A stretch of DNA of 64,000 bases from the sequence record PV654397.1; one strand, written 5' to 3'. Shown piece after piece: positions 3,340-42,250 of the stretch. Made by a program: the position numbers and the translations under genes. The notes under the pieces are model-generated. The model did not search any database and was not told the origin of the DNA. It worked only from the letters and a program-made list of their open reading frames with translations. Position 1 is the stretch's first letter, and every line of letters starts with the position of its first letter.

Positions 3340-3367
3340 ATTATACAGTACTACAAACGTTTGTCAA
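3340..3367 (-). promoter_or_regulatory. sigma70-type promoter with AGTACT abutting the -10
   Basis: TTGACA-aacgtttgtagtactg(16)-TATAAT. Confidence 0.75.
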
Positions 3368-7300: not shown

Positions 7301-7329
7301 ATAATACTGCTATTATTCAGTACTGTCAA
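7301..7329 (-). promoter_or_regulatory. sigma70-type promoter, AGTACT overlapping the -35
   Basis: TTGACA-gtactgaataatagcag(17)-TATTAT. Confidence 0.75.
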
Positions 7330-7649: not shown

Positions 7650-7677
7650 ATTATACAGTACTGATATCTTATGTCAA
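7650..7677 (-). promoter_or_regulatory. sigma70-type promoter with CAGTACTG abutting the -10
   Basis: TTGACA-taagatatcagtactg(16)-TATAAT. Confidence 0.75.
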
Positions 7678-8181: not shown

Positions 8182-8976
8182 TTAAATTACATATGGTTTA
8201 TAGTAATGAATCTCGTTTGCGATTGCAGTGAAAACTTTATTATTAAATCTTTCACCATAATCACGAAGTGATTCACCTTCTTCGCTTTCAATAAAGTAAT
8301 TATATACTGGTAGACGTGCGGTGTCAACACCTATAAATGATTTCATGTAAATTTGTACTAAACGATTCATTCCTTCATTTAAGCATTGCACCTCAAAGTG
8401 CTTGATACCTTTGTCTAAATGTTTGAATGCATTAATGATACCACGTTTAAAATCACGCTGCATAGTACTGAATAGATTCTCAGGGAACACTGTAATAGGT
8501 GACATTGATTTAAGAATGTATGTATCTTTAGCATTCTTAATATACTCAATGAAGCAGTAGTTAACGTCAGGCTCGATAGAACGATCAGCGTTATGATACC
8601 AGTGCTTAAACTCACTGTACTCAGCAAACTTATGCTGGCGTAATGCGTTACAATCCTCACACAATGCAGTCATGTTCTCTTTATCATTACCGCCCTGAAG
8701 ACAGTCCAGTACATTATGGTCTAACGTCATGCGTACAAGACGTTTCCCTTTAAGTACATAAGGTCTGAATTTATAACGGTCTTTAGTACTGTGCTTATGT
8801 AAAGTGAATACCACATTGGATTCACCACAACAATCACATTTAAAGCCATCACGTGACATTACATGAATGAGTTTTCGAGTATTTGGGCCGAACTCAGATT
8901 TAGTAATGTTGCCGACAATTTCTGATGGGTCGTAGTATTTTGAATTCCGGCGAATCAATTCATCTATAGTGCTCAT
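8182..8976 (-). CDS. HNH endonuclease domain protein
   Basis: CDCC...TLDH...GGN...N...LCEDCN HNH/zinc pattern. Confidence 0.7.
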   Translation of the reverse strand: MSTIDELIRRNSKYYDPSEIVGNITKSEFGPNTRKLIHVMSRDGFKCDCCGESNVVFTLHKHSTKDRYKFRPYVLKGKRLVRMTLDHNVLDCLQGGNDKENMTALCEDCNALRQHKFAEYSEFKHWYHNADRSIEPDVNYCFIEYIKNAKDTYILKSMSPITVFPENLFSTMQRDFKRGIINAFKHLDKGIKHFEVQCLNEGMNRLVQIYMKSFIGVDTARLPVYNYFIESEEGESLRDYGERFNNKVFTAIANEIHYYKPYVI

Positions 8977-10076: not shown

Positions 10077-11045
10077 TTAAAAATCTTCGAACTCATAACC
10101 TTTTGTCTTAACCATCTTACGCAGTCGTTCCATTGCTTCAGAGTACTTACGGTGCAATGAAGAACGAGCAGTCATGACCTTACCCTTCTCATCTTCAAAA
10201 CCACTCTCAATGATTTCTCGTAGCGTTTCTGGTTCAGAATAAGAACCAATACCATGTACACGTTCAATCAATTCACGGTCTTTGGCAGATAGGTTACTCA
10301 TCATTTCTGCAATACTTTGTACCAGTGGGGTACTGACAGTTTCTACGCCTAAGTTGTAATCAGGTTCAACTGAAGTAACAATGTCAGATAATGTACTTTC
10401 TGAATCATTACTCATTTTCATATTCAATGCTACATAAGTGTTATTGTAAGTTAGACAATTCTTAACGTGTTGAATCTCAATACCAGTCTCTTTTGACACC
10501 ATCTCAGGAGTTGGGTATTTACCATGTTTCCTTTGATACTCTTCTACACAACGTTTCACATAAATGTTATTAACACTCATATAACGTGGGAAATGCACTA
10601 GATAATTAGCATCTGCACTTTCGTTATAGATTGTCATGTACACAGTTGTTGTTGCATATGTAATGAACTTAACATTTTTGGTAGTGTCGAACGTATGAAT
10701 TGCTCGCATTAAACCTTCAACACCATAAGAAATCTTATCTTCAAATGGGATAAAACATGTACACTTACGTGCAACACTTACTACCATTGGATAGTTGTAG
10801 CGAACCAAAAGGTCAATGTTCTTTTCAACGTCAATACCATCACGCACTGCTTGGATGAGCATTTCATTCGTTATCCCTTTAGGGCGAGTTAAGCTGATAC
10901 CTGTTTTTGGTTTCTCAAACTTGTGACCGTCATGTTCTTCTTCTTCTTCGACGGAATCAAGAGCCTCTAATACGTTGACTTCTTCACTAGCAAAACACTC
11001 ATCCAGTACTTCTTCAGAAATTGCATTTAAATCAAGCTTTTTCAC
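10077..11045 (-). CDS. RNA polymerase sigma70-family factor
   Basis: region 2 LVRYNYPMVVSVARK...EDKISYGVEGLMRAIHTFD...KFITYA; region 3 PTPEMVSKETG; region 4 ETLREI. Confidence 0.9.
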   Translation of the reverse strand: MKKLDLNAISEEVLDECFASEEVNVLEALDSVEEEEEHDGHKFEKPKTGISLTRPKGITNEMLIQAVRDGIDVEKNIDLLVRYNYPMVVSVARKCTCFIPFEDKISYGVEGLMRAIHTFDTTKNVKFITYATTTVYMTIYNESADANYLVHFPRYMSVNNIYVKRCVEEYQRKHGKYPTPEMVSKETGIEIQHVKNCLTYNNTYVALNMKMSNDSESTLSDIVTSVEPDYNLGVETVSTPLVQSIAEMMSNLSAKDRELIERVHGIGSYSEPETLREIIESGFEDEKGKVMTARSSLHRKYSEAMERLRKMVKTKGYEFEDF

Positions 11046-15122: not shown

Positions 15123-15703
15123 AATGGTAACTCCTGAAGTGGTTTAATAATACTCAGTACTGGGTGATTTTCAATCATTGGTCGCCCTGGTACACCTGTT
15201 AGCACAACTGGAATCGAACTAATGTCTTTTACATAGTTGAATCCCTCAAATGTGAATTCTTGCTTTTTCTCATTATACAATACCCACAGAATAACGTCAG
15301 CTTTTTTCTGTATATTTTTCAACTGTCGAGTACTAACACATGGTCCAAAGTCGGTCCACGATTTGTACTTGATACCTTTCACTTCAATTCTTAAGTTGTT
15401 TACTTTGATATCACATTCCCCATCACGTCCATCACTTTGGAACGCTGGATCGATGTTAAGTGCAATACCTGAATAGTTTTCAATTTCATTAAAAAGTACA
15501 AATGACGCATGTTCACATACCATCCCCACAAAATGACTGTGAGCGTGATTAAATCCATACGGCGATTTACTTGCAGGTGCAAGAATCTTATATCGTTCAG
15601 ATTTCTCAATTGCTTTAGCCATAAAAGAATCAGCTTCATCTTTGTATAGCTTAACAGTCATTTTACCATTTTTCAGTACTAAACGTTTTTCTACAACACT
15701 CAT
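15119..15703 (-). CDS. putative PD-(D/E)XK nuclease-fold protein
   Basis: GMVCEHA...DG.CDIKVNNLRIEVKG pattern. Confidence 0.55.
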   Translation of the reverse strand: MSVVEKRLVLKNGKMTVKLYKDEADSFMAKAIEKSERYKILAPASKSPYGFNHAHSHFVGMVCEHASFVLFNEIENYSGIALNIDPAFQSDGRDGECDIKVNNLRIEVKGIKYKSWTDFGPCVSTRQLKNIQKKADVILWVLYNEKKQEFTFEGFNYVKDISSIPVVLTGVPGRPMIENHPVLSIIKPLQELPL

Positions 15704-20023: not shown

Positions 20024-20387
20024 TTATGTTGTCAACTGACAATCCACACATATCGTATAATGTAGATAGCTGAAAGAACATATCTTCATCTATAGTAACA
20101 TGTTCAATCTGCATTTGCAAGAGCACTTCACCAAGAAAATGATCGTATGTTTGTATCTTAAAAGAATCATAATATATATCAATGAAGAATTTTGGCACAC
20201 CATAGAACGAAACGACAAGTACAATGTTGTCAGAAGCTTCACATGGAACACTCAATGTATTTTTAAATGAACGGTATTCAAATGTGTACGGGTCTACGTC
20301 ACATGTATAGAATGAATTACACCCTTCAGAAAATATTACACCATTTTCAATTAGCATAGATAGTGTATGTGGTGGAATTTTCAACAT
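19983..20387 (-). CDS. TEE-FQ-S paralog family protein
   Basis: IDEDMFFQLSTLYD. Confidence 0.75.
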   Translation of the reverse strand: MLKIPPHTLSMLIENGVIFSEGCNSFYTCDVDPYTFEYRSFKNTLSVPCEASDNIVLVVSFYGVPKFFIDIYYDSFKIQTYDHFLGEVLLQMQIEHVTIDEDMFFQLSTLYDMCGLSVDNINGIFEIARTLRGR

Positions 20388-20395
20388 TTAAATGT

Positions 20396-20812
20396 TTATC
20401 CTTTATTTTGTTGTACGTTTTTATGTAGTACACCACAAATATAAAATAATTTACTTAGATTAGAATAACTTATGTTAGTTAGATCGTATACGAAATTTAG
20501 TTGCATGTACATATCTTCAGTTAAATCATACAACGATTCATCCACATCAATTACGATTTTGTGCGTGGTATCAATCTCTACTTTATTAGGCCACATATCA
20601 ATAACATAATCATTACCATGTTTTTCAGATATGGAAATGAACACATTATCGCTTTGTTCTAAAAACTCCATGTATCCGTTAAGAAATGATCCAGTTATTA
20701 TCTCATATTCACCAGAATAATACGTTGTTCTGGACTCAAATGCATTAAAAAATATAAAACGATATGTTTGGTTGATATACTCATCCATTAAACTAATAAC
20801 TTCTTTATTCAT
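20396..20812 (-). CDS. TEE-FQ-S paralog family protein
   Basis: LTEDMYMQLNFVYD; start set at MNKEV. Confidence 0.7.
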   Translation of the reverse strand: MNKEVISLMDEYINQTYRFIFFNAFESRTTYYSGEYEIITGSFLNGYMEFLEQSDNVFISISEKHGNDYVIDMWPNKVEIDTTHKIVIDVDESLYDLTEDMYMQLNFVYDLTNISYSNLSKLFYICGVLHKNVQQNKG

Positions 20813-20830
20813 TACATTAATCCCCACAAG

Positions 20831-20861
20831 AAAAAAGGCCGATTCATTATGAATCAGCCTT
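20831..20861 (-). terminator. intrinsic terminator
   Basis: AAGGCTGATTCAT-A-ATGAATCGGCCTTTTTT. Confidence 0.75.
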
Positions 20862-20902
20862 AAGTATAACACAGTAGAAGTAAAAATGTCAACTTCTAAA
20901 AT

Positions 20903-21038
20903 ACAGTATCAAAGAGGAATAAAAAGATACTGTTAGAGGGTAACGAATATAATGAACCATGAGGGTGATATCATTATACTTTAAAAGAGTGATAGCTTCT
21001 AGACAAAAGGAGGAATTCAGTACCGACTAGAAGCTATC
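20903..21038. ncRNA. array of three hairpins with purine-rich SD/GGA-like loops (+) or anti-SD loops (-)
   Basis: 8-, 8- and 12-bp stems; + strand loops AAAGAGGAAT, ATGAGGGTGAT, AAAAGGAGGAATT. Confidence 0.5.
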
Positions 21039-21051
21039 CGGTTAAACGATT

Positions 21052-21336
21052 TCAGTACTGAATGTTTAGTTTAGGATGAGTATGTCCATCTTCGATTTGC
21101 TTTAGAATCGAGTCGCGGATCTCCACTGCACCCTGATAACTGTATTTATCGTTCGGAACTACCCATGTATATTCACCATCAGTGGTTTTAAAATCAATAC
21201 ATGGATTGTCTCTGTATTCAGATGCAATGATTGAAATAACATGCAATGAATTCAATGAATGATTTATATAAGGATAATTGTTATTGTCTCGGAACGTGAA
21301 TGTTTTTAGTTCATCAGGTGCAACAATAAATTCCAT
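21052..21336 (-). CDS. hypothetical protein
   Basis: 94 aa. Confidence 0.7.
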   Translation of the reverse strand: MEFIVAPDELKTFTFRDNNNYPYINHSLNSLHVISIIASEYRDNPCIDFKTTDGEYTWVVPNDKYSYQGAVEIRDSILKQIEDGHTHPKLNIQY

Positions 21337-21527
21337 TATTCATCCTCGTACTTCTTGAATGGTTGAACATCTCCATTGAAGTCTTTGCACATCTTAGTTA
21401 CACGAACTTCAGTGTTGTTGTGGTAATTTTTCTTAAATTCATAAGAAACATAATTACGAATACCAGGTGTATGAATAATAGCAAGAACCAATGTACGACC
21501 AAATAAGCATAACAAATTCAAAAACAT
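21336..21527 (-). CDS. hypothetical protein
   Basis: 63 aa. Confidence 0.6.
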   Translation of the reverse strand: MFLNLLCLFGRTLVLAIIHTPGIRNYVSYEFKKNYHNNTEVRVTKMCKDFNGDVQPFKKYEDE

Positions 21528-21540
21528 ATTAAGCTCCGAG

Positions 21541-21900
21541 TTATGGATTAATCAAACGACACATACCAACTATAACATTTATCTCTTCTAATGTCAAGTC
21601 ACCAATGTCATTTATCATTGAGTACTGGAATAATGACTCTTCTGTGTACTCAAAATCATGTACTGCTATAAAAAATGGCTCCTTAGAAACATCTAATGTT
21701 ATCTTAGCCATTGTACTATATAAATCAAATTGATACAAAATATTAGGAGAAGTATATGCTATGTATATATTATTAGATTCAGATGGGTGTACCAGTGTGA
21801 ATACATCATAACATAATATTTTTATGTTAGGATCATCAAAATTACCAGTATAAAGATTCTTACGAACATCTTGCATTATACGAGTTATTAAACTAGTCAT
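21541..21900 (-). CDS. TEE-FQ-S paralog family protein
   Basis: YTEESLFQYSMIND. Confidence 0.75.
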   Translation of the reverse strand: MTSLITRIMQDVRKNLYTGNFDDPNIKILCYDVFTLVHPSESNNIYIAYTSPNILYQFDLYSTMAKITLDVSKEPFFIAVHDFEYTEESLFQYSMINDIGDLTLEEINVIVGMCRLINP

Positions 21901-22325: not shown

Positions 22326-22721
22326 TTATTTACGATTCCTTGCGGAGTTCTTGTTCCTTGCTCTGAATGTCGGTGTCATTGAATGACAATTGGGGCAAAG
22401 AATTTTTAAATTTGGTAGGTCATTATTGGTAGCATCACCATCAATGTGCTCAACTTCTGTCAGTACTGCACCATCTGTTGGGTGACGTTTATCCCATCCA
22501 CATTCTTCACATGCAGTTCCGCGTGTTTCATGTAGATATCTTCTCACAAATGGACATAACTGTATAGTAATACCTTTATATCCTGGATGTTCACCGTTAA
22601 GCCATTTATCAACTTTCTGTTGATATTGTAGCTCTTGTTGACATGCAACACTACAATATTTTGTTTGGCCCTTTCGAACTAATTCAATTTTACAACATGC
22701 ACAATAACGTTTTTCTTTCAT
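22326..22721 (-). CDS. HNH homing endonuclease
   Basis: CACC/CSVAC N-terminus; CEECG...EVEHIDGDATNNDLPNLKILCPNCH; start set at MKEKRY (GGAG SD). Confidence 0.85.
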   Translation of the reverse strand: MKEKRYCACCKIELVRKGQTKYCSVACQQELQYQQKVDKWLNGEHPGYKGITIQLCPFVRRYLHETRGTACEECGWDKRHPTDGAVLTEVEHIDGDATNNDLPNLKILCPNCHSMTPTFRARNKNSARNRK

Positions 22722-22972: not shown

Positions 22973-23087
22973 GCCAAGAGTCGGCATAGGTGCAGCACTA
23001 CAAAGTTCTTCAAGCTGCTTGGTAGTTTCTTTACTTACTTTCATATTGACCTCGTTAGGTTAAAAACCCCAGTTTTCTTCTTGAACC

Positions 23088-23828
<741 letters not shown>

Positions 23829-24522: not shown

Positions 24523-25065
24523 TTATTGTCGTTCATCATCATGAATCTCACGATGACAATTTGCACAAACCATAATACATTTATCCAGTTCTATTTTAAT
24601 TTTTTCAAAAGAACGAGTTGCACCTTCTTGACTAATTGAATAATCTTTCTGTGAAGGATCAACATGATGGAATTCTAATGCGGCAATGCATTTATCATAT
24701 CCACACTTTTCACAACAACCGCCTTTGTATTCAACGGCTAGTATTTTTAATTTTCTACGTCTATCAGAAACACGTTGACTGTCACATTTTAAACATTTCC
24801 ATTTACCTTGTGAATTTAATTCATAATTCTTATTGTGTATTTCACAAAATCGCATTTCATTGGTTGATTTTGGTCGTTTAACACCATGTGATTCAACGAT
24901 ATCATTTATTCTTGATCTATTACACTTATATTCTTTGGCTAAACCGTAAATTGGCATACCATTTAAATATTTTTGAATTATTTCATTCTCTGGTAATTTA
25001 GAACTTTTAGCCTTTAATGATTCAGCTATTTTTTTACGTGTTTCTTCTGATTGTTTTCGTCCCAT
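24523..25065 (-). CDS. HNH homing endonuclease with NUMOD3-like N-terminus
   Basis: MGRKQSEETRKKIAESLK; YKGGCCEKCGY...LEFHHVDP...ELDKCIMVCANCHREIH. Confidence 0.85.
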   Translation of the reverse strand: MGRKQSEETRKKIAESLKAKSSKLPENEIIQKYLNGMPIYGLAKEYKCNRSRINDIVESHGVKRPKSTNEMRFCEIHNKNYELNSQGKWKCLKCDSQRVSDRRRKLKILAVEYKGGCCEKCGYDKCIAALEFHHVDPSQKDYSISQEGATRSFEKIKIELDKCIMVCANCHREIHDDERQ

Positions 25066-26315: not shown

Positions 26316-26340
26316 ATTATATCAGTACTGAACTATTTAG

Positions 26341-26344
<4 letters not shown>
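26316..26344 (-). promoter_or_regulatory. sigma70-type promoter with CAGTACTG in spacer
   Basis: TTGACT-aaatagttcagtactga(17)-TATAAT. Confidence 0.8.
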
Positions 26345-26936
<592 letters not shown>

Positions 26937-26940
<4 letters not shown>

Positions 26941-27097
26941 ATTCGTACCAGTAGTTCAATTAAGTACATTTCATATGCTGGATCGTTGATAAGTTTATCA
27001 TACAGATGTGGCTCTGAAATGAATTCCCAATGATACTTTAGCCATTTACCGATACCCGAATATCTAAAATTAATGTCATTCATCCATTCTTCATGTG

Positions 27098-27101
<4 letters not shown>
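26937..27101 (-). CDS. MTHEEW-family small protein (54 aa)
   Basis: MTHEEWMNDINFRYSGIGKWLKYHWEFISEPHLYDKLINDPAYEMYLIELLVRI. Confidence 0.75.
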
Positions 27102-27262
<161 letters not shown>

Positions 27263-27279
27263 GGTTTAACCTTTAATTG

Positions 27280-27365
<86 letters not shown>

Positions 27366-27371
27366 ATATTT

Positions 27372-27776
27372 TTAATATAATTTTCTAATATATTTCTTAC
27401 GTTCTTCAGTTAATGTAAATGCTGAATGTGCATCAATGTCATCAATTGGGATGATATATATGTCATTATTATCACACAACACAAACAGTATGTCACACGA
27501 TGTTTTATCAAAGTTTCGTATAACACTCTTACCACTAGAACCACCACTATTTTTTAGTTGGACATTATAATTTCCAGATGGTGCTTTGTATGATGTTGTT
27601 TTTACGGATACTCTATACAATTTAATATTATCATCAACAACCAAGTCATATGATTGTGTGTCATTCATCGGTATCGACACTGAATAACCATTCGTGACAT
27701 AGTAATCTATTGCACGAGCAACTCCAATATTTCCTTGTTTTGATTTATATTCGTTTCCCCACATTTTACGTTCCAT
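27372..27776 (-). CDS. PD-(D/E)XK homing endonuclease (I-Ssp6803I-like)
   Basis: GNIGVARA...GYSVSIP....SYDLVVD....RVSVKT. Confidence 0.8.
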   Translation of the reverse strand: MERKMWGNEYKSKQGNIGVARAIDYYVTNGYSVSIPMNDTQSYDLVVDDNIKLYRVSVKTTSYKAPSGNYNVQLKNSGGSSGKSVIRNFDKTSCDILFVLCDNNDIYIIPIDDIDAHSAFTLTEERKKYIRKLY

Positions 27777-27832
27777 GTATTTTTGTTATCATGTTAATAA
27801 TTATATCACATCTTTATAGTCTGTTCCAATAT

Positions 27833-28123
27833 TTATGATTCGGTTTCGGGATTAAATTTTATAAATTCATCTTTATGTTCATCTTCAATCGCAATATCTT
27901 CTACGTGTTCAGGCCAGATTGTGGTGTCCCCTTGGTAGAAGCGATAGTTATCGAATTCTGCACTACGTGTTCTTCCCTGTTCCCAACCAATAGTACAGTC
28001 ATGATATACATCACCACTACGTGTACGAATGCTTATTGAGTCTTGTGTTTCATAAAGAACGTCAATGCGTGTGTTACGATTTGTATTGAATTTTTCAAAA
28101 TGCATAGTAATCCCCAATAACAA
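27833..28123 (-). CDS. hypothetical protein
   Basis: ORF; true start probably MHFEK. Confidence 0.65.
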   Translation of the reverse strand: MLLGITMHFEKFNTNRNTRIDVLYETQDSISIRTRSGDVYHDCTIGWEQGRTRSAEFDNYRFYQGDTTIWPEHVEDIAIEDEHKDEFIKFNPETES

Positions 28124-28126
28124 TTG

Positions 28127-28345
28127 TTATTCTTGTGGTTTAGTTACACCAACACCAATAATACTTTTAATATCAATATGGATATTAGCAAGTTCATTAC
28201 TGTCAAACGGGTTAGTTTCAGTTACAACAACAGTGGTGTCATTAACTAAAACTACTGAACCTTTTACACGGTATCCCTGAAGGAGTACTTGTACATTGTC
28301 GCCAGCGTTTAATGAGTTAATAACTTCTAATAGAGTAGATTCCAT
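28127..28345 (-). CDS. hypothetical protein
   Basis: 72 aa, AGGA SD. Confidence 0.75.
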   Translation of the reverse strand: MESTLLEVINSLNAGDNVQVLLQGYRVKGSVVLVNDTTVVVTETNPFDSNELANIHIDIKSIIGVGVTKPQE

Positions 28346-28355
28346 TTTATTTTCC

Positions 28356-28553
28356 TTACGGTTTACTATTTTTACGTTTTTCTGATTCGGGTATAGTTTT
28401 CATTTCACCAATACATAGTTCCATGATGAGCACACCTTTGTCATTATAACGTACTACATCTTCAATGTCAAAATGTCTCGCACTATGAACAACTTCAATA
28501 CATGCATCATCGGGATATGATTCCAATAATGCTACAAGTTCTGCTTTAGTCAC
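28356..28553 (-). CDS. hypothetical protein
   Basis: 65 aa, GAGG SD. Confidence 0.7.
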   Translation of the reverse strand: MTKAELVALLESYPDDACIEVVHSARHFDIEDVVRYNDKGVLIMELCIGEMKTIPESEKRKNSKP

Positions 28554-28566
28554 TTTGGATTCCTCG

Positions 28567-28915
<349 letters not shown>

Positions 28916-28925
28916 AATATATCTT

Positions 28926-29096
28926 CTATTCCCTAAATACAAGCTCATATATGAACCATCGATTTCCATCCTCATCTAGTACATATAAATCGAACTGATG
29001 TTTGTCTCGTAAAATATCGTAATGACCATCACGAAATCCATTCCCAAACAGATCATATCGTTCTTTCATAATAGACATCCATTCTTCATGTGTCAT
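28926..29096 (-). CDS. MTHEEW-family small protein (56 aa)
   Basis: MTHEEWMSIMKERYDLFGNGFRDGHYDILRDKHQFDLYVLDEDGNRWFIYELVFRE. Confidence 0.75.
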   Translation of the reverse strand: MTHEEWMSIMKERYDLFGNGFRDGHYDILRDKHQFDLYVLDEDGNRWFIYELVFRE

Positions 29097-29596
29097 TTAC
29101 GTTGCATCCAATGTGAACCAGTCCAGACTTTTTTCTTTTCACGTTCTATCTGTCGTTGTTTTAATTCTTCATCCCACAGAATATTGTCGTTTAAGAAATA
29201 GTTATATAGTTCTTTTAACTTCAAATTATCTGAAAATGCGGGAAAGTACTTATTATCACATACCAAACTCTCTTGAAAATGTACATCTTCATCGGTGATG
29301 TATTGATATGTGAAAATTCTATTCGGGTTTGGATAGATACCATTTGTTTCAGAGAAACATTTTCTAAGTAGTCTTTTACCAAAATCACAGATAATAGTAT
29401 CTTTACGAATAAAATTCCAGCGAGTAACCATTTTAATTGTTAGAGTTTGATAATTCTGATCTAAGCTTATTTGATGTTCACCATCTTTGTGCTTATAGTG
29501 ATAAGTACCTTGTTTTCGAACTGTTCGTTCAAATTCATTAACATTAATTTTACTTAAAATCTCAGTAATACTTTCCGGTACATGCGTAATGAGCAT
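29093..29596 (-). CDS. TEE-FQ-S paralog family protein
   Basis: TDEDVHFQESLV. Confidence 0.75.
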   Translation of the reverse strand: MLITHVPESITEILSKINVNEFERTVRKQGTYHYKHKDGEHQISLDQNYQTLTIKMVTRWNFIRKDTIICDFGKRLLRKCFSETNGIYPNPNRIFTYQYITDEDVHFQESLVCDNKYFPAFSDNLKLKELYNYFLNDNILWDEELKQRQIEREKKKVWTGSHWMQRK

Positions 29597-29641
29597 TATT
29601 GTTCTCCTGTTTAAAACAAAACAATAGCATATATATCAGTA

Positions 29642-29824
29642 CTAGTCAATTTTTTTGTCTCTAACCGCAAGCTCATAGATGAACCAGTGATTACTATCCT
29701 CATCAAGTACAAATGATTTGAAAAGTTGTTTATCTTTTAACACATCATAATGACCTTGGCGTATACCAAAACAAAAAGGATTATGTTTAAATTTTAGTTC
29801 ATCTAACCATTCTTTGTGTGTCAT
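29642..29824 (-). CDS. MTHEEW-family small protein (60 aa)
   Basis: MTHKEWL...GHYDVLKDK...VLDEDSNHWFIYELAVR, aligned to 28926-29096. Confidence 0.75.
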   Translation of the reverse strand: MTHKEWLDELKFKHNPFCFGIRQGHYDVLKDKQLFKSFVLDEDSNHWFIYELAVRDKKID

Positions 29825-30006
29825 CTTATTTTGTCCATGACTGCTATACTAAAATATGTACCAAAATCATCACAATTGATGATGTTGTTATAGTACTCGA
29901 TTGGGTTACGCAATGATATATACAATTCAAGCTTAAAATAGTATATATCTGCTGCATTTATATTATAGTGTAGATTAAACCACTCATCAAATGTCTTAGG
30001 CTGCAT
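29821..30006 (-). CDS. hypothetical protein, possible distant MTHEEW relative
   Basis: KTFDEWF...FSIAVMDK. Confidence 0.6.
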   Translation of the reverse strand: MQPKTFDEWFNLHYNINAADIYYFKLELYISLRNPIEYYNNIINCDDFGTYFSIAVMDKIR

Positions 30007-30400
30007 TATATTTATCTTTATAAAAATCCATGATTTTAGTCAACAGTACTGCAATCGTATAATCTAAATCAGGATAAAGTAAATTGTACTGAAATTCTTC
30101 CTCTACACTATAGTTTGTGGTGCAGTACTGATAGTCTTTATAACCAATGGAAAAATGGTTAGGATACAATGTACAACGAAAACGATATGCTTCATCTGTC
30201 ATATAATCATTGTATTCAACACAGAAGTATAGTGATTTGGCATTTAATTCAATAAGCTCAACGAAACCATCAGGTAATGAATGGTTATAAATTACTGAAT
30301 CTTCATTAAACCATTCATAGTATTTTTCCAAAAAATCACTAATGGATACATCCAGACTTTGTATAGGTGGAGTTATGATAATTTGAACTTCTTTATTCAT
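29996..30400 (-). CDS. TEE-FQ-S paralog family protein
   Basis: SVEEEFQYNLLY. Confidence 0.7.
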   Translation of the reverse strand: MNKEVQIIITPPIQSLDVSISDFLEKYYEWFNEDSVIYNHSLPDGFVELIELNAKSLYFCVEYNDYMTDEAYRFRCTLYPNHFSIGYKDYQYCTTNYSVEEEFQYNLLYPDLDYTIAVLLTKIMDFYKDKYNAA

Positions 30401-30903
30401 TTCGACCCCTTACTATATTTCACGTATGGGCTATCATACAGATCATAACTTTTTTGTGCACGTTCTTTTCGGCGTTCATACATGATTCTATCATAATCTT
30501 TGGCTTTCTGATTTGCTTCATTATACAATTTTAAAATTAGCAAAAAAGCATCAAGGTCGGGGTAGTTTGCTGGATTGATAGTACTCAGCATAAATCGTTC
30601 TTCTTCAGTTCTAGCTAAGTCAAACTCGTACTTAATAGTTTTATATCCACTCCATTTATATGTATGTGTTACTTTATTAGTAAGTACATTGTATCCAACG
30701 AAATCAGTACTACCATCAAGTACGCGAGTAATCATAATAGATGTACCAATGACAATCTGCACAGAACTCATTTCTGAAGTTTTAAAGTAATATATATTAC
30801 CACGTCGCAGATTAACTTCTCGATCTCCAATGCGAACATGCTTAATAACTTCCATTAATGGTTCTGGTACACCACGAATCGGCATGTTAGTATTCCTCAA
30901 CAA
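30397..30903 (-). CDS. TEE-FQ-S paralog family protein
   Basis: RTEEERFMLSTIN. Confidence 0.75.
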   Translation of the reverse strand: MLRNTNMPIRGVPEPLMEVIKHVRIGDREVNLRRGNIYYFKTSEMSSVQIVIGTSIMITRVLDGSTDFVGYNVLTNKVTHTYKWSGYKTIKYEFDLARTEEERFMLSTINPANYPDLDAFLLILKLYNEANQKAKDYDRIMYERRKERAQKSYDLYDSPYVKYSKGSK

Positions 30904-31456
30904 CGGTTAGGAATCTATCCCAACCAGTATAAGTGAAATGATCAAAGTATTGTTTTTCGCCACCTACCATATATACTTCAATTAAACCGTGGTCGAAATA
31001 ATTTTTTGGTTTTTTAACTTCAGTTACAATTGCTTTATGTCTGAAACCATTATAATCAGTATATGTTACAATATCGTGAATTTTGATATTATCAGGTGTA
31101 TAAGTGTTGGCGTTATTATTGAGAACATGAAGATGATGGTCTACGATTTCTTTACTGGAAATTACCCCAAATATGTTACCAGAAAATACTTTATTACCAT
31201 TACAGGTCAATGCCCAGCCATCACCAACTTCAATAGATTCAAATACATAATGTGTGCAAATTTTAGATACATCTGACGTATCCCAGTAATCACCATCAAG
31301 ATTGGTGAATTTATAAACAGTTTTGAGTTTTTCGCCATCAAATGAAAGCAATGATACTCCGATAACAACCGTTCCGTCTTTAAGAATAATATTAAATTTA
31401 TTATTTGTATTAAAGTATGCTTCTGACTCAGATGAGTTGAATTTAATAAAGTTCAT
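30887..31456 (-). CDS. hypothetical protein
   Basis: 189 aa, AGGAG SD. Confidence 0.75.
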   Translation of the reverse strand: MNFIKFNSSESEAYFNTNNKFNIILKDGTVVIGVSLLSFDGEKLKTVYKFTNLDGDYWDTSDVSKICTHYVFESIEVGDGWALTCNGNKVFSGNIFGVISSKEIVDHHLHVLNNNANTYTPDNIKIHDIVTYTDYNGFRHKAIVTEVKKPKNYFDHGLIEVYMVGGEKQYFDHFTYTGWDRFLTVVEEY

Positions 31457-31503
31457 ATGTTCTCCTTAGTAAGTCATAGTATTATATCAGAGTTTCATTG
31501 CAC

Positions 31504-31896
31504 TTACCAGCATGTTTTCATAACTTCTGTGATGTAAATCATTTTATCTTTTAGTTCATAAGGGATGCAAATTTCACCTGGGCTTAACGTTGTGTTCTTT
31601 TGAAACTCATCCTCTTCGGAATCAGCCAGGTAAAATGGGTGCGTCACAAAGTTATCATCAACTGGACGATTATGTGGTTTCATTAATGCATCATGATTGA
31701 CAAAATAATAAGCATCAATATCAGGACGGAAATACAAACAATCAACCTTAATGCACGGGTGTAACCATAAGGACAAAGAATATGTTATTTGGTTACCAAT
31801 TTGTCTTGGACCAGATGCAATTGTATTGATGTTATTTTTATCTTGTACCATTTCATAAATGAAATCTATCATTTCACGTAGTTCAGATTCAGTCAT
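31504..31896 (-). CDS. TEE-FQ-S paralog family protein
   Basis: DSEEDEFQKNTTL. Confidence 0.7.
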   Translation of the reverse strand: MTESELREMIDFIYEMVQDKNNINTIASGPRQIGNQITYSLSLWLHPCIKVDCLYFRPDIDAYYFVNHDALMKPHNRPVDDNFVTHPFYLADSEEDEFQKNTTLSPGEICIPYELKDKMIYITEVMKTCW

Positions 31897-31946
31897 TTTA
31901 TTTCCTTAAAAAAATACCCAGTACTAGACTGGGTATAAAGTAATGT

Positions 31947-32096
31947 TCAATCAGATTTCTTTTCGTAATCTGCAAAAACAGTCAGGATTGTTGCACACAG
32001 TGAATCAACTGCTGCTGCACGTTTTTCATCAAGGGATTTCGCTAGTTCTTGAATCTCTTGAAGTTTTACTACTAAGTCAATTTTTTGATTACTCAT
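31947..32096 (-). CDS. small hypothetical protein
   Basis: start set at MSNQK (AGGAG SD). Confidence 0.65.
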   Translation of the reverse strand: MSNQKIDLVVKLQEIQELAKSLDEKRAAAVDSLCATILTVFADYEKKSD

Positions 32097-32118
32097 TACT
32101 TCTCCTATTGAATGTATT

Positions 32119-32424
32119 TTAGATGTTAATTTTGATACCAGATAGATCCAGTACTTTACGTATAGGAGGTTCTGGTTCAGGCTGAACAACCTCTTCAGGC
32201 TCTTGTGCTGGAATCTTTGTGTTAATATTTAGACCATCTTGAAGAATTTCAGGGATAATTCCATGCTGCACATCATTGTACATAGACACAACCGTTTCTG
32301 CACAAGATAACATTTCACGAACTTTAAACTGATATCCTTGTGGTAAATCTTTGATGATTTCCATAACATCTAATAACTTCGTTTGTACATCAATAAGAAT
32401 ACTGTTTGATTTATCTGCGTCCAT
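32119..32424 (-). CDS. hypothetical protein
   Basis: 101 aa. Confidence 0.7.
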   Translation of the reverse strand: MDADKSNSILIDVQTKLLDVMEIIKDLPQGYQFKVREMLSCAETVVSMYNDVQHGIIPEILQDGLNINTKIPAQEPEEVVQPEPEPPIRKVLDLSGIKINI

Positions 32425-32930
32425 TAATCCAACTCCACTACGTTATTTTTTTTCTTTGTATTTACTACAGTGGGTGAATCATTTTTTGTCACATCACCTC
32501 GTAGTTTCTTTTCTAGTGCGATGATACGCTTTAATGTCTTAATTGACGGTCGTTTCTTTGTTAGCTCGGCTTTTGCTTCAGTATAATACTTTCGGATATA
32601 TCCATATGCATAATACTTAGAACCAATAAAAATTTCAGCAACGGCTGGCTGGTAACTCATTTCGTACCCATTAATGTCCACGGGTGATGCATAAAATACA
32701 ATATTTGTATTACACGAAGAAATTTTAGCAACCAGTAAGTTAGCTTCAAGTTTATTCAAAATCAATGTAGTGGTTTCTTCTGCCTCGTCACTGTACTGCA
32801 TAGCTGACATTAGAAGTTGAAAGGACTTGAAGTAATTACTACCACTGATTACCGTATTGAAGATTAAGCCCAATGTAATCAGTACTAGTGTACCAAGACA
32901 TATAAACAAAAACCAATATTCAACACTCAT
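32424..32930 (-). CDS. hypothetical protein with N-terminal TM helix
   Basis: start set at MSVEYW (GAGG SD). Confidence 0.7.
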   Translation of the reverse strand: MSVEYWFLFICLGTLVLITLGLIFNTVISGSNYFKSFQLLMSAMQYSDEAEETTTLILNKLEANLLVAKISSCNTNIVFYASPVDINGYEMSYQPAVAEIFIGSKYYAYGYIRKYYTEAKAELTKKRPSIKTLKRIIALEKKLRGDVTKNDSPTVVNTKKKNNVVELD

Positions 32931-32996
32931 TAATATATCCTCAGTTTGTATTTTATTAAAAAAAGCCCCATCAACATTGATGAGGCGGGAAATCAA

Positions 32997-33206
32997 TTAC
33001 TTACGGTTTGCTTTACGCAGTTCAGAAAGTTCTTCTTGTAGACTTTTCTTCCATGCAATTAGATGAGCAAAACGGATTGGCCTTGCACCAGTACCGTGGA
33101 ATACTGCGAGAGCTTCTTCAGCTTGATGAATCTGGAACTGAATGTAGTTCACAGTGCGGTCGAAGTCGGTGATATCTAGTACTTGTGCGTTAGTTTCTTT
33201 AGCCAT
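32997..33206 (-). CDS. hypothetical protein
   Basis: 69 aa. Confidence 0.75.
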   Translation of the reverse strand: MAKETNAQVLDITDFDRTVNYIQFQIHQAEEALAVFHGTGARPIRFAHLIAWKKSLQEELSELRKANRK

Positions 33207-33323
33207 TTTTAATACCCTTTTATTTCTTTTTTATGAAAAACCCTCATCATTGAGGAATGGTTTGCATTTTTACATCTGCCGATAATATACATTATATCAT
33301 GCTTTTCAGCGTTGTCCCAAAAA

Positions 33324-33683
33324 TTAATTATTTTTTAGAACAAATTTCACGACTGGTAACTCTGTTTCGTTTGATTCGGATTCATTATATCCGTTCTTCG
33401 TGAGAACGTCAATAACTTTTTTAGAATCGATTGTAAATTTATCAAGTTCAGTATAACGATAATAACCAATGGTCTGACTGAACTCATACTCACCTGGACG
33501 CTGACGGCAACATGTTTGTGTTTCTGACATAATTGCATTGATTAGATAATAAGATTCAGTACTATCATTGTTTGGTACATAAATCTTACCATCAAAATGA
33601 ATCACTTCATGTTTATTCATACAGTGAGTTGATCTCCACTTGAAGAATTGAAATAATTTCCTTTTGAAGACCTGTAATTTCAC
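33324..33683 (-). CDS. hypothetical protein
   Basis: 119 aa; start uncertain. Confidence 0.65.
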   Translation of the reverse strand: MKLQVFKRKLFQFFKWRSTHCMNKHEVIHFDGKIYVPNNDSTESYYLINAIMSETQTCCRQRPGEYEFSQTIGYYRYTELDKFTIDSKKVIDVLTKNGYNESESNETELPVVKFVLKNN

Positions 33684-33882
33684 TATTCAGTGAAGATAAA
33701 CGTTTGGTCAATGCCATAAACTGTTTAGCGTCTTCTTTGGAACGGTCATTGCGAACTTTATCGGAACTCCAGTTAGCATATGATTGCTCATCTTTTTTGT
33801 TAAGAATGTCCCAGTCCAAACGGACTAGTTTTCGTTCTTTCTTAAGTTCGCTTAGGCGAGATTTCATTTCTTCTTTAGTCAT
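33613..33882 (-). CDS. coiled-coil hypothetical protein
   Basis: 89 aa. Confidence 0.65.
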   Translation of the reverse strand: MTKEEMKSRLSELKKERKLVRLDWDILNKKDEQSYANWSSDKVRNDRSKEDAKQFMALTKRLSSLNSEITGLQKEIISILQVEINSLYE

Positions 33883-34172
33883 TACAATGTTCCTTTCATA
33901 AAGTCAGGGATAACGATTACGATAGAAGGATTATACTCCACATATCCATTCTTTGTCAATAGACTTTTGATATCAGAAATAACATTATCATGTTGTTCCA
34001 TATCTTTATCGCAGTGAATTTCCAATTCTTTTAGGAAAGGTTGTTTAACTGAAATTGATTGGGTCAGTGTTTGAATACGCTGCATCATATCAATTGGGTC
34101 AGGACTGAACTCATTACCAACATAAAGAGTGCCGGATGCATCCTTTTCAAGTAAGACTTCTAAAATTTTCAT
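33882..34172 (-). CDS. hypothetical protein
   Basis: 96 aa. Confidence 0.7.
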   Translation of the reverse strand: MKILEVLLEKDASGTLYVGNEFSPDPIDMMQRIQTLTQSISVKQPFLKELEIHCDKDMEQHDNVISDIKSLLTKNGYVEYNPSIVIVIPDFMKGTL

Positions 34173-35005
34173 TTTGTACCCTTTAATGTACCAAAATTAC
34201 GTAGAGTAAATCCAGGAACTGGGAAATATACATCACAGTCAATGTCAGGATTAATTGTCACTACCTCATTACACATTATATCACGAATTCCACTTCCGTC
34301 TACGATTTTTTGCATTAAATCGTTCCATTCTTTTCGTTCAATAACATATGTGTTAATCAAACACAAGTCATGACCACGTTTCGAAATATAACCAAGTACT
34401 ACATCATTGTGGACAACACGTATAGTAACTTTTCCAATTCGAGTTCCTCGTACTGCATTAGTACTAGTATCGTCGTAAATCAGTTCTATCCTAAGTGAAC
34501 CATTAGATATAAGAGTTGTGGTATATTTTGAAACCATATTCTCAATTTCTTGAGTTAAATCGTCTCGGTTAAGGTACTCAAACACCGAATATGTCAACTC
34601 ATTTGCATCCAAATATTGGACTGTTGGAAGCTGGGCAACCATATCCAAAGATACAGGTTCTATGTATATTTTTTCAATATCAGATGTTTTGACGAATAGA
34701 TACCCTTCTAGCGTCATTGAACTAACAATTTCCGCATAATAAGAGTACAGATAAAAAACATTCGTCTCATTCGAATCAGTTTCAACCCAAACCTCTGGCT
34801 GTTTCATCTCATATTGTTGTAGAATTCGTTGTGTAAACCCAATGTAAAATCCAAGATTAACATCGGATTGAGTTTCAAATGGATTAAACATCAAATATGG
34901 ATATTTGTCAAGATACTCATTAAACTTACGCTGGGTATCTCTATCACAATCAATGATGTACTTTCGGAATTCAGAAATAATTACTTTTTCCAATGACATA
35001 ATCAA
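34169..35005 (-). CDS. hypothetical protein
   Basis: 278 aa. Confidence 0.8.
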   Translation of the reverse strand: MIMSLEKVIISEFRKYIIDCDRDTQRKFNEYLDKYPYLMFNPFETQSDVNLGFYIGFTQRILQQYEMKQPEVWVETDSNETNVFYLYSYYAEIVSSMTLEGYLFVKTSDIEKIYIEPVSLDMVAQLPTVQYLDANELTYSVFEYLNRDDLTQEIENMVSKYTTTLISNGSLRIELIYDDTSTNAVRGTRIGKVTIRVVHNDVVLGYISKRGHDLCLINTYVIERKEWNDLMQKIVDGSGIRDIMCNEVVTINPDIDCDVYFPVPGFTLRNFGTLKGTK

Positions 35006-35199
35006 TCCTCACGATGCATATAGTACATAAACATCGCCAACCATATGCAGAATCCCACGCAACGAAGAAACAGATCAACTGTTGGGTCTGTACCACCATT
35101 AACTTGGTAAACGATTACTGGGATTAAAGCAATAGCAATAGATACAGCACATAAGATGAATACAACAAACACCTCAAACATAAACTTAATCGTTTCCAT
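35002..35199 (-). CDS. small membrane protein
   Basis: two hydrophobic helices. Confidence 0.7.
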   Translation of the reverse strand: METIKFMFEVFVVFILCAVSIAIALIPVIVYQVNGGTDPTVDLFLRCVGFCIWLAMFMYYMHRED

Positions 35200-35773: not shown

Positions 35774-35790
35774 TTGATTAATATAGGAGT

Positions 35791-35819
35791 ATTATACATA
35801 CTCCATTTTCATGTGTCAA
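35791..35819 (-). promoter_or_regulatory. sigma70-type promoter
   Basis: perfect TTGACA-17-TATAAT; overlapping GGAGTAT/ATACTCC inverted repeat. Confidence 0.85.
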
Positions 35820-38111: not shown

Positions 38112-38126
38112 AGCGTGGATCTGTAA

Positions 38127-39469: not shown

Positions 39470-39521
39470 ATAAAATCCTTTTTATATTGTTAAGGTACTA
39501 TAATACATTATAGCATCTTAT

Positions 39522-39812: not shown

Positions 39813-39851
39813 GGTCCAACGGTTCTTTTGGTTTTTCTGCCATATATTTCC

Positions 39852-40112: not shown

Positions 40113-40126
40113 TTTGATACCTTTAG

Positions 40127-42220: not shown

Positions 42221-42250
42221 AAATTTATCCTCTATGTATCATTATCTTAC

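What the first reader, a model, noticed from the sequence alone, without database searches (positions are those of the whole stretch)
20903..21038. Array of three hairpins presenting SD/GGA loops (+) or anti-Shine-Dalgarno loops (-)
SEEN: stems ACAGTATC/GATACTGT (20903-33), TATAATGA/TCATTATA (20948-78) and GATAGCTTCTAG/CTAGAAGCTATC (20991-21038). Loops on the + strand read AAAGAGGAATAAAAA, ACCATGAGGGTGATA and ACAAAAGGAGGAATTCAGTACCGA. On the transcribed minus strand they read TTCCTCTTT, TATCACCCTCAT (compare the 16S 3' end GAUCACCUCCUUA) and TTCCTCCTTTT. The array lies between a stop codon and a terminator. KNOWN: CsrB/RsmZ sponges show repeated GGA loops, and RNAIII-type sRNAs use C-rich loops to block RBSs. 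INFERENCE: a phage sRNA that either titrates CsrA/RsmA or occludes ribosome-binding sites.
Basis: partly seen in the sequence, partly recalled or inferred. Interest (0 to 1): 0.66.

Follow-up and report, generated by a model that had tools for sequence, protein, structure and literature searches.

The report
Structured phage 3'UTR with anti-SD loops
Between two early genes of a jumbo E. coli phage lies a conserved run of RNA hairpins whose open loops carry ribosome-binding-site-complementary CCUC motifs; it probably tunes translation or RNA fate, but no separate small RNA has been shown.

Summary
The window is an Asteriusvirus jumbo coliphage, 100% identical to phage WPEC5. The three hairpins exist exactly as described and are non-random. 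All local genes are on the minus strand. The array follows the TGA stop of a 94-aa ORF. The folding strand is the minus strand: one-sided stem changes in relatives give G-U pairs there, and a few changes are compensatory.

CCUC is rare on this strand, with 255 copies in 381 kb. Four lie in this array, the densest cluster in the genome. They are predicted unpaired and persist in diverged relatives. Two relatives have lost some or all of them.

Hairpin 3 is the conserved core and is single-copy per genome. Its loop also holds a copy of a genome-wide palindrome that can pair with a second copy at the stop codon.

My best reading is a structured 3'UTR of an early operon that presents anti-SD loops. 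A CsrA sponge on the plus strand is not supported. A discrete sRNA is not shown. RNA-library contigs join the array to the upstream ORFs.

The parts
21569..21597 (-). Upstream sigma70-type early promoter (TTGACA, 17-nt spacer, TATAGT). It probably drives the 63-aa and 94-aa ORFs and the hairpin array.
   Evidence: Consensus scan, 11 of 12 matches. Its role as the source of the array transcript is inferred.
21052..21336 (-). 94-aa ORF of unknown function (phrog_30132). Its TGA stop at 21054-21052 lies inside palindrome copy M1.
   Evidence: No Pfam match. The ORF is absent from phage JNE01, which still has the spacer.
21051..21062 (.). M1, a copy of the genome-wide palindrome TTCAGTACTGAA. It is invariant in all relatives. 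It can pair over 10-12 bp with M2 in the hairpin 3 loop.
   Evidence: The M1:M2 helix is 96.6% paired in 5 lineages, with one compensatory change (A-U to G-C) and two G-U changes.
20991..21038 (-). Hairpin 3, with a 12-bp stem and 24-nt loop. It is the conserved core of the array. The loop holds M2 (21015-21026, CGGTACTGAA here, CAGTACTG in relatives) and the anti-SD-like UCCUCCUU (21007-21014).
   Evidence: The stem is 95% paired, with one compensatory and several G-U changes. A covariance model scores 85-100 bits only at the orthologous locus in three genomes; the next hit scores 25 bits or less.
20948..20978 (-). Hairpin 2, with an 8-bp stem that extends to 10-14 pairs in the fold and includes two G-U pairs. 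The loop reads AUCACCCUCAU.
   Evidence: It is lost in ph0011 and reduced to a weak 5-bp stem in JNE01. The loop motif is lost in UE-S1.
20934..20947 (-). Single-stranded linker carrying a fourth CCUC motif (UUACCCUCUAAC).
   Evidence: Unpaired probability is 0.89-0.99. In UE-S1 it reads ACCCUCCUAA.
20903..20933 (-). Hairpin 1, with an 8-bp stem. The loop reads UUUUUAUUCCUCUUU.
   Evidence: One compensatory change (C-G to A-U in JNE01) and G-U changes. The stem is rewritten in A4 while the loop stays C-rich.
20876..20897 (-). Hairpin 4, which encloses the -35 box. Its layout resembles a PeSL (promoter-early stem-loop), a composite cassette known from T4-like phages.
   Evidence: A4 has a different stem sequence at the same place (GGTATTGAC...CAATGCC).
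20863..20892 (-). Sigma70-type promoter for the downstream ORF (-35 TTGACA, -10 TATACT). The -10 box is invariant in all relatives.
20826..20861 (-). Intrinsic terminator: a 12-pair stem with 5 G-C pairs, a 3-nt loop and a U run. It is nearly invariant. The expected start site of the promoter above falls inside its 5' arm.
   Evidence: G17 and UE-S1 annotate a terminator here. The start-site position is inferred.
20396..20812 (-). Downstream 138-aa ORF of unknown function (phrog_35192). PBECO4-type relatives carry DNA here that megablast does not match.

Best explanation
The array is an RNA-level element in the structured 3' untranslated part of an early minus-strand operon. The order on that strand is: promoter near 21597, the 63-aa ORF, the 94-aa ORF, hairpins 3, 2 and 1, and the terminator at 20835. 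It sits directly upstream of a composite promoter/terminator junction that starts the next transcription unit.

The stems hold four pyrimidine motifs single-stranded: UUCCUCCUU, CACCCUC, UACCCUC and AUUCCUC. These are complementary to GAGG/GGAGG-type Shine-Dalgarno sequences. I think the most likely action is occlusion of ribosome-binding sites by base pairing. This could act on the mRNA that carries the array, or in trans after the 3'UTR is trimmed to a stable fragment ending in the terminator hairpin and U tail.

Shown: the hairpins, their conservation, the folding strand, the rarity of CCUC and its clustering, the predicted accessibility, and the flanking promoter and terminator sequences.

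Inferred: transcription as a 3'UTR, any processing, and pairing with ribosome-binding sites.
For: - Fold z = -6.9 on the minus strand, and all local genes are on the minus strand.
- The element is present in all 36 Asteriusvirus records found.
- It stays in place although the flanking genes vary. The downstream gene has no megablast match in the PBECO4 type. The upstream ORF is absent from JNE01.
- 94.7% of stem cells are paired across 12 distinct sequences. In the well-aligned hairpin 3 region there are 5 G-U pairs and no A-C mismatch.
- CCTC occurs 40 times in 64 kb and 255 times in 381 kb on this strand. Four lie here, the top cluster genome-wide.
- The motifs are predicted unpaired in the window, G17, 121Q, UE-S1, JNE01 and A4.
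- Contigs from RNA libraries cover 20875-21668 and 20937-21792 in one piece with the upstream ORFs, at higher depth than the downstream gene. None spans 20840-20874.
- The hairpin 3 loop UUCCUCCUUU is a perfect 10-nt complement of the AAAGGAGGAA ribosome-binding sites used by the phage's RCC1-like (beta-propeller repeat protein) paralogue cluster.
Against: - No strand-specific or end-resolved RNA data exist. Contigs cannot show strand, ends or a single transcript.
- No promoter dedicated to the array was found.
- UE-S1 lost the motif in two loops. ph0011 lacks hairpin 2 and most of hairpin 3 and is still a viable phage, so the element is dispensable.
- Overall the spacer diverges at about the rate of third codon positions.
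- Covariation is thin because diversity is low: 2 double changes in 53 pairs.
- A search for complementarity longer than the SD core gave no specific target. Any anti-SD sequence matches strong SD sequences by construction.
- In E. coli this kind of multi-loop C-rich regulator has no established precedent that I know of.
Confidence: 0.38

Rival explanations
1. This is a passive structural 3'UTR module. The hairpins protect the upstream mRNA from 3' exonucleases or act as weak tandem terminators that shield the downstream promoter. The loop sequences have no partner.
For: - The array sits just upstream of a terminator/promoter junction.
- Hairpins 3 and 1 are each followed by four U residues.
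- The stems are kept while two loops drift in UE-S1.
- The element is dispensable in ph0011.
- Other composite hairpin/promoter junctions occur in the window at 1588, 50008 and 52434.
- T4-like phages have PeSL cassettes of this general kind (PMC2839356).
Against: This does not explain why four of the genome's 255 CCUC motifs lie here, all unpaired, and persist in A4 and JNE01 despite 64-71% identity. The 15-24-nt loops and the offset U runs are poor terminator features.
Confidence: 0.3
2. The C-rich, G-poor untranslated stretch is a loading site for a protein that prefers pyrimidines. One candidate is a Rho utilisation (rut) site backing up the intrinsic terminator. Another is a site for a phage or host RNA-binding protein.
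For: The array has 30 C against 17 G, the 99th percentile of C minus G on this strand. It begins right after a stop codon. CCUC provides YC dimers. That Rho prefers YC-rich RNA is general knowledge.
Against: About 55% of the region is predicted base-paired, whereas rut sites are typically unstructured. A strong intrinsic terminator already follows. Seven other 136-nt stretches in the window are as C-rich or more so. No candidate protein was identified.
Confidence: 0.1
3. This is a DNA-level element. The palindromes and the GAGG repeats on the plus strand are binding sites for a phage or host DNA-binding protein that regulates the adjacent promoter or marks a recombination junction.
For: - The palindrome CAGTACTG occurs 252 times in the genome, 62 times more than expected. 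It is found in all reading frames and repeatedly inside promoter spacers.
- Two copies flank the 5' arm of hairpin 3.
- In JNE01, homology resumes at M1.
Against: - One-sided stem changes give G-U pairs on one strand, which points to folding of a single strand rather than duplex recognition.
- M2 is mutated to CGGTACTG in the WPEC5 clade yet still pairs with M1 through a G-U pair.
- The CCUC motifs sit in hairpin loops, which dsDNA sites do not require.
- The palindromes lie 120-170 bp upstream of the -35 box.
Confidence: 0.1
4. The plus-strand transcript is a CsrA/RsmA sponge that presents GGA/SD-like loops.
For: On the plus strand, the hairpin 1 loop has one GGA and the hairpin 3 loop has two.
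Against: - No plus-strand promoter scoring 9 of 12 or better lies nearby, and the terminator works only on the minus strand.
- The plus-strand fold is weaker, and G-U pairs become C-A mismatches.
- The hairpin 2 loop and the linker lack GGA. UE-S1 has no GGA in hairpins 1 and 2.
- No CsrB/CsrC/Rsm Rfam match appears even at E = 10.
Confidence: 0.03
5. The spacer encodes a micro-protein. A 35-aa and a 25-aa ORF are annotated here in 121Q and G17, and a plus-strand ORF in SD-1_S14.
For: These annotations appear.
Against: - The G17 ORF (25 aa) reads only 13 codons in the window because of a 1-nt indel.
- Several 1-2-nt indels separate close relatives.
- There is no SD before the ATG.
- The plus-strand ORFs are equally frame-broken.
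Confidence: 0.02

Closest known systems
C-rich-loop riboregulators of Firmicutes: SprX (encoded by S. aureus converting phages) and RoxS/FsrA/RsaE
   Same: Hairpins present C-rich motifs in accessible loops that pair with Shine-Dalgarno sequences and block ribosome loading (PMC4005690; PMC8216469). SprX is also phage-borne.
   Different: Those are discrete sRNAs with their own promoters, use UCCC/CCC motifs and act in Gram-positive hosts. This element is in a virulent jumbo coliphage and has CCUC(C) motifs. It has no promoter of its own, looks like a 3'UTR, and has no demonstrated target. No Rfam match was found.
PeSL (promoter-early stem-loop) cassettes of T4-like phages
   Same: Both are a strong sigma70-type promoter combined with a stem-loop/terminator between small variable early ORFs. 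In PeSLs the stem-loop lies between the -35 and -10 boxes or over the -10 box (PMC2839356; PMC4122927). Hairpin 4, the promoter and the terminator at 20897-20826 have this layout. Gene content differs between relatives on both sides.
   Different: The three hairpins of the finding lie upstream of that cassette and are not part of the PeSL definition. The cassette sequence is single-copy in the window, not a dispersed repeat family. The phage is not a T4-like virus.
3'UTR-derived, terminator-sharing sRNAs of enterobacteria (CpxQ/SroC type; general knowledge)
   Same: The element lies between a stop codon and the operon's intrinsic terminator, which has a U run of six. RNA-library contigs are continuous with the upstream ORFs.
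   Different: No processing site, Hfq binding or discrete species has been shown. A promoter for the next gene is embedded between the array and the terminator.
CsrB/RsmZ protein sponges
   Same: Both have several hairpins with short conserved loop motifs.
   Different: The strand is wrong and the conserved core is wrong (GAGG/CCUC, not GGA). There is no promoter on that strand and no model match.

Membership tests
CsrB/CsrC/RsmX-Z sponge RNAs | Match to a curated covariance model | tested here: not met
   There were no hits at gathering score across the whole window, nor at E up to 10 on 20780-21120.
CsrB/CsrC/RsmX-Z sponge RNAs | Many GGA motifs in hairpin loops of the transcribed strand, conserved in relatives | tested here: not met
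   GGA is present in the plus-strand loops of hairpins 1 and 3 only. It is absent from hairpin 2 and the linker, and lost in UE-S1 hairpins 1 and 2. The shared core is GAGG.
CsrB/CsrC/RsmX-Z sponge RNAs | Own promoter and terminator on the motif-bearing strand | tested here: not met
   No plus-strand promoter-like site lies near 20800-20900. The terminator has a U run only on the minus strand.
C-rich-loop anti-SD sRNAs (SprX/RsaE/RoxS type) | C-rich motifs held unpaired in loops | tested here: met
   Unpaired probability is 0.69-1.0 in the window and about 0.5-1.0 in five other lineages, against a mean of 0.40-0.48.
C-rich-loop anti-SD sRNAs (SprX/RsaE/RoxS type) | Discrete transcript with its own promoter | tested here: not met
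   No minus-strand promoter scoring 9 of 12 or better lies between 21336 and 21040. RNA-library contigs are continuous with the upstream ORFs. This rests on a consensus scan and contigs only.
C-rich-loop anti-SD sRNAs (SprX/RsaE/RoxS type) | Demonstrated pairing with a ribosome-binding site and translational repression | not testable with these tools
   Only complementarity could be computed. The best case is 10 nt to AAAGGAGGAA ribosome-binding sites.
C-rich-loop anti-SD sRNAs (SprX/RsaE/RoxS type) | Sequence or structure homology to a known family | tested here: not met
   There is no Rfam match.
PeSL composite promoter/terminator cassettes | Sigma70-type early promoter with a stem-loop between or over the -35 and -10 boxes, between small ORFs | tested here: met
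   This is met for 20897-20826 only: hairpin 4 over the -35 box, the TATACT -10 box, and the terminator whose 5' arm begins 1 nt after the -10 box. The definition comes from PMC2839356.
PeSL composite promoter/terminator cassettes | Conserved cassette sequence repeated at many junctions | tested here: not met
   The 19-nt core occurs once in the window even with 3 mismatches allowed. A blast of the spacer against the whole genome finds only the palindrome elsewhere.
PeSL composite promoter/terminator cassettes | The three hairpins of the finding belong to the cassette | tested here: not met
   They lie 10-145 nt upstream of the -35 box, outside the defined cassette.
3'UTR-derived terminator-sharing sRNA | Lies between the stop codon and the intrinsic terminator of the same strand | tested here: met
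   The stop is at 21054-21052 and the terminator at 20861-20835 with a U run.
3'UTR-derived terminator-sharing sRNA | Stable processed species, with Hfq or ProQ association | not testable with these tools
   Only contigs were available. The raw-read RNA run held no reads of this phage.
Type III toxin-antitoxin antitoxin RNA (ToxI-like) | Tandem direct repeats upstream of a terminator and a toxin gene | tested here: not met
   No tandem repeat was found at score 30 or above. The downstream protein has no Pfam match and only a PHROG of unknown function. The PADLOC defence library was not scanned.
Rho utilisation (rut) site | C-rich, G-poor and largely unstructured RNA after a stop codon | tested here: inconclusive
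   C exceeds G at the 99th percentile, but the region is strongly structured.

The most novel reading that the evidence does not exclude
Asteriusvirus jumbo phages make a multivalent anti-Shine-Dalgarno RNA. It is the 3'UTR of an early operon, possibly trimmed to a stable fragment, and its four exposed CCUC(C) motifs clamp strong GAGG/AAGGAGG ribosome-binding sites. Targets could be the phage's own RCC1-like paralogue cluster or host mRNAs. A translation-sensitive pseudoknot between the stop-codon palindrome and the hairpin 3 loop would gate its activity.
Probability: 0.2. Interest if true: 0.75.

Novelty: new variant of a known kind. Interest (0 to 1): 0.45.

Why it matters
Almost nothing is known about post-transcriptional control in Rak2/121Q-type jumbo coliphages, where most early genes have no known function. 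A conserved RNA element that mimics the ribosome's anti-SD tail at several exposed sites would be a simple way for a virulent phage to re-programme translation. It would carry the C-rich-loop mechanism, so far known mainly from Gram-positive bacteria, into a coliphage.

It is also easy to test. Natural variants already lack parts of it: ph0011 lacks hairpin 2 and most of hairpin 3, and UE-S1 lacks the motif in the loops of hairpins 1 and 2.

If instead it is only a structural 3'UTR, it still marks a transcription-unit boundary that helps annotate these genomes.

Tried and rejected
- **Rfam:** no family matched at gathering or E-value thresholds. The sub-threshold hits all sit on the terminator.
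- **tRNA or tRNA remnant:** ARAGORN finds nothing in the spacer.
- **Coding:** the annotated micro-ORFs are frame-broken between close relatives.
- **Tandem repeats or a ToxI-like array:** none found.
- **Dispersed repeat family:** the hairpin 3 covariance model finds one copy per genome. Weaker hits are driven by the palindrome. A blast of the spacer against the whole WPEC5 genome finds only the palindrome and one marginal 14-mer.
- **More relatives:** the IMG/VR scan returned only 121Q. The metagenome scan gave 35 loci, of which one was a real relative, identical to the G17 type.
- **Own-genome search:** I rebuilt the WPEC5 genome from record stretches instead.
- **Specific targets:** searches for complementarity of 9-12 nt gave nothing beyond generic SD matches.
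- **Cis pairing with the downstream gene's SD:** the SD differs between relatives without matching loop changes.
- **Vestigial promoters after hairpins 3 and 2:** a perfect TATAAT lies at 20978-20973 but has no usable -35 box (reading; scan).
- **SlmA hijack through the AGTACT core:** the palindrome fails two of SlmA's required positions.
- **Raw-read RNA run X21:** it held no reads of the phage, so it gives no test.
- **Literature:** no Asteriusvirus transcriptome was found.
- **Second CCUCC-bearing non-coding region (WPEC5 20737-21329):** its motifs are mostly paired, so it is not the same design.

Full report
**Identity and setting.** The window is a piece of an Asteriusvirus jumbo coliphage. 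Positions 20300-21700 are 100% identical to Escherichia phage WPEC5 (PV654397) at 82300-83700. 34 related records match, all from Escherichia or Salmonella phages. Around the finding every credible gene is on the minus strand and is small with unknown function. The region also has tRNA genes and many sigma70-type promoters on the minus strand. This matches the early regions described for related Rak2-like jumbo phages (PMC5259590).

**The observation.** The 241-nt spacer folds far better than shuffles on both strands, and better on the minus strand: -63.3 kcal/mol (z = -6.9) against -58.0 (z = -5.1). Three such hairpins within 140 nt arose in 2 of 150 shuffles of the whole window.

**Order of features on the minus strand:**
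- the TGA stop of a 94-aa ORF (21054-21052);
- hairpin 3 (21038-20991);
- hairpin 2 (20978-20948);
- a linker;
- hairpin 1 (20933-20903);
- a fourth hairpin (20897-20876) that encloses the -35 box of a strong promoter (TTGACA, 18-nt spacer, TATACT, 11 of 12 matches);
- an intrinsic terminator (20861-20835 plus a U run);
- the start of the next ORF at 20812.

**Comparative evidence.** The spacer is present in all 36 Asteriusvirus records found, at identities from 100% down to about 71%. I aligned 15 versions.

- The -10 box and the terminator are almost invariant.
- Hairpin 3 and the palindrome just upstream of it are the next best conserved.
- Hairpins 1 and 2 vary more.
- ph0011 lacks hairpin 2 and most of hairpin 3. 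JNE01 lacks the upstream 94-aa ORF but keeps the spacer.
- In PBECO4-type phages megablast similarity stops just past the terminator, at window 20828, so the downstream gene there is unmatched.

So the spacer is a stable junction between variable genes. Scans of IMG/VR and metagenomes added no new variants.

**Which strand folds.** Across 12 distinct sequences, 94.7% of stem positions pair. Diversity is low: only two pairs show double changes. In the well-aligned hairpin 3 region, five cells are G-U on the minus strand and none is A-C. The window's own stems contain three G-U pairs. On the plus strand these would be C-A mismatches. A4 rewrites the stems of hairpins 1 and 4 while keeping the hairpins in place, and it has one A-U to G-C swap in hairpin 3. 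Together with gene orientation, this points to a minus-sense RNA as the folded molecule.

**The loop motifs.** CCTC is rare on the minus strand: 40 copies in the window and 255 in the 381-kb WPEC5 genome, or about 0.09 per 136 nt. Four lie in this array, which is the densest cluster in the whole genome. Among 43 long same-strand spacers, no other has more than two on the transcribed strand.

In the partition function the motifs are unpaired with probability 0.69-1.0 in the window and about 0.5-1.0 in G17, 121Q, UE-S1, JNE01 and A4. The mean over each spacer is 0.40-0.48. They persist in A4 and JNE01, whose spacers are only 64-71% identical to the window.

The motifs are not universal. UE-S1 has AU-rich loops in hairpins 1 and 2, though it gained CCUCC in the linker and CCCUC upstream of hairpin 3. 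ph0011 has none. Overall the spacer diverges at roughly the rate of third codon positions. Constraint is therefore local.

**Hairpin 3 and the palindrome.** A covariance model of hairpin 3 with its upstream flank scores 85-100 bits only at the orthologous site in WPEC5, JNE01 and A4. The element is single-copy.

Its loop contains a copy (M2) of the palindrome CAGTACTG. A second copy (M1, TTCAGTACTGAA) overlaps the stop codon. M1 and M2 can form a 10-12-bp helix that is topologically compatible with the hairpin 3 stem, giving a pseudoknot with the two helices abutting. In five lineages this helix is 96.6% paired. It has one compensatory change (A-U to G-C in JNE01) and two G-U changes. One of those is the CAG-to-CGG change that breaks the palindrome in the WPEC5 clade but keeps the pairing. 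This is suggestive, not proven. A ribosome terminating at the stop codon would cover M1, but a gating role is my inference only.

**RNA evidence.** No Asteriusvirus transcriptome was found in the literature. Public RNA-library runs hold related phages only as contigs.

- Contigs cover 20875-21668 (depth 18.5) and 20937-21792 (depth 12.7). Both are continuous with the upstream ORFs.
- The downstream gene is covered at lower depth: 4.0 in one of these runs and none in the other.
- No contig spans 20840-20874.

This fits a transcript boundary at the promoter/terminator junction, with the array belonging to the upstream transcript. Contigs cannot show strand, ends or a single molecule, and DNA carry-over is not excluded. 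The one raw-read run had no phage reads.

**Interpretation.** The plus-strand CsrA-sponge idea fails on strand, promoter, motif core and model match. Coding is excluded by frame-breaking indels. There is no tandem repeat, tRNA or Rfam family.

What remains is a minus-sense structured 3'UTR whose loops display sequences complementary to GAGG/GGAGG. The simplest function that explains the selected, exposed CCUC motifs is pairing with Shine-Dalgarno sequences. This is the way phage-borne SprX and the RoxS/RsaE group work in Firmicutes. I give this about 0.38.

A purely structural stabiliser or insulator role gets 0.30. It explains the position and the dispensability but not the motif cluster. Protein loading such as Rho gets 0.10, since the region is C-rich but highly structured. 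A DNA-level role linked to the palindrome also gets 0.10.

No specific target emerged. The best lead is the 10-nt match of the hairpin 3 loop to the AAAGGAGGAA ribosome-binding sites of the RCC1-like paralogue cluster. That cluster holds 8 of the genome's 15 AAGGAGG sites. Such a match is partly expected for any anti-SD mimic.

**Comparison with known systems.** The part from hairpin 4 to the terminator has the layout of the PeSL promoter/stem-loop cassettes of T4-like phages. Its sequence, however, is not a dispersed repeat. The three hairpins lie outside that cassette. The element is not a member of any curated RNA family. I rate it a new variant of a known kind (C-rich-loop, 3'UTR-type riboregulatory element), with function unproven.

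Noticed in passing
Whole window, e.g. 21053-21060, 23240-23247, 23361-23368, 7656-7663, 26323-26330, 26744-26751; also the whole WPEC5 genome: The palindrome CAGTACTG is hugely over-represented. It occurs 40 times in the window against about 0.9 expected, and 252 times in the genome against 4 expected (62-fold). The next-best 8-mer palindrome is enriched only 6.8-fold. AGTACT occurs 1122 times against 128 expected. The 12-mer TTCAGTACTGAA occurs 28, 17 and 23 times in WPEC5, JNE01 and A4. The motif is found in all reading frames, is 2.3-fold enriched in intergenic DNA, and is densest in the terminal-repeat region. Its function is unknown, and I found no paper describing it.
   Followed up: partly
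Window 7656-7677, 26744-26765, 26323-26344, 3350-3367, 15155-15174, 7318-7329, 51218-51229: The same palindrome repeatedly sits inside sigma70-type promoters. It often abuts the -10 box (CAGTACTGTATAAT) or the -35 box (TTGACAGTACTG). These are operator-like positions.
   Followed up: partly
WPEC5 record 21107-21140 and about 21270-21330 (outside the window; L075 1608-1641 and about 1771-1830): Pairs of palindrome copies form hairpin stems. One is a 14-bp terminator-like hairpin followed by AUUUUAAU. Another encloses the -35 box of a promoter.
   Followed up: partly
WPEC5 record 20737-21329 (outside the window, near the start of the direct terminal repeat): A stretch of about 590 nt carries no annotated gene. 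It has a minus-strand sigma70-type promoter and a structured RNA unit of about 160 nt (fold z = -4.2). It is 79-99% conserved in nearly all Asteriusvirus records found. It contains CCUCC motifs, but most are paired. The related phage PA5oct has highly expressed non-coding RNAs in its terminal repeat.
   Followed up: partly
The palindrome compared with the E. coli SlmA site: The motif shares the AGTACT core of the SlmA-binding sequence GTGAGTACTCAC. It lacks the required G at position 1 and the purine at position 3, so it is not a good SlmA site by the published specificity (PMC3020112).
   Followed up: yes
Window about 1570-1593, 49958-50001 and about 52450-52480: There are other compact terminator/promoter composites. 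At 1588 the terminator hairpin contains the -35 box. At 50008 the hairpin spans the -10 box, so transcripts starting there would lack its 5' arm. At 52434 a classical terminator directly precedes a promoter.
   Followed up: no
WPEC5 record 26672-43008 (outside the window): A cluster of about 14 plus-strand paralogues is annotated as RCC1-like 'chromosome condensation regulator' proteins. Most use the same strong ribosome-binding site AUAAAGGAGGRAA.
   Followed up: no
Window 23290-23370, minus strand: Another spacer carries two copies of ATTCAGTACTGAAT 121 nt apart. The first is followed by a hairpin whose loop carries GGGGAGG, then a GTG start and a 19-codon ORF.
   Followed up: no
Window 20033-20376 and 23044-23109: Related phages in the RNA-library contigs differ here. 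They skip 342 nt at the first site and replace 64 nt with 121 other letters at the second. These are strain-level indels in the early region.
   Followed up: no
Window 10077-11045, 38609-39469, and 8182-8976 / 22326-22721 / 24523-25065: The WPEC5 record annotates an RNA polymerase sigma factor, a DNA methyltransferase and three HNH endonucleases among the small early ORFs.
   Followed up: no
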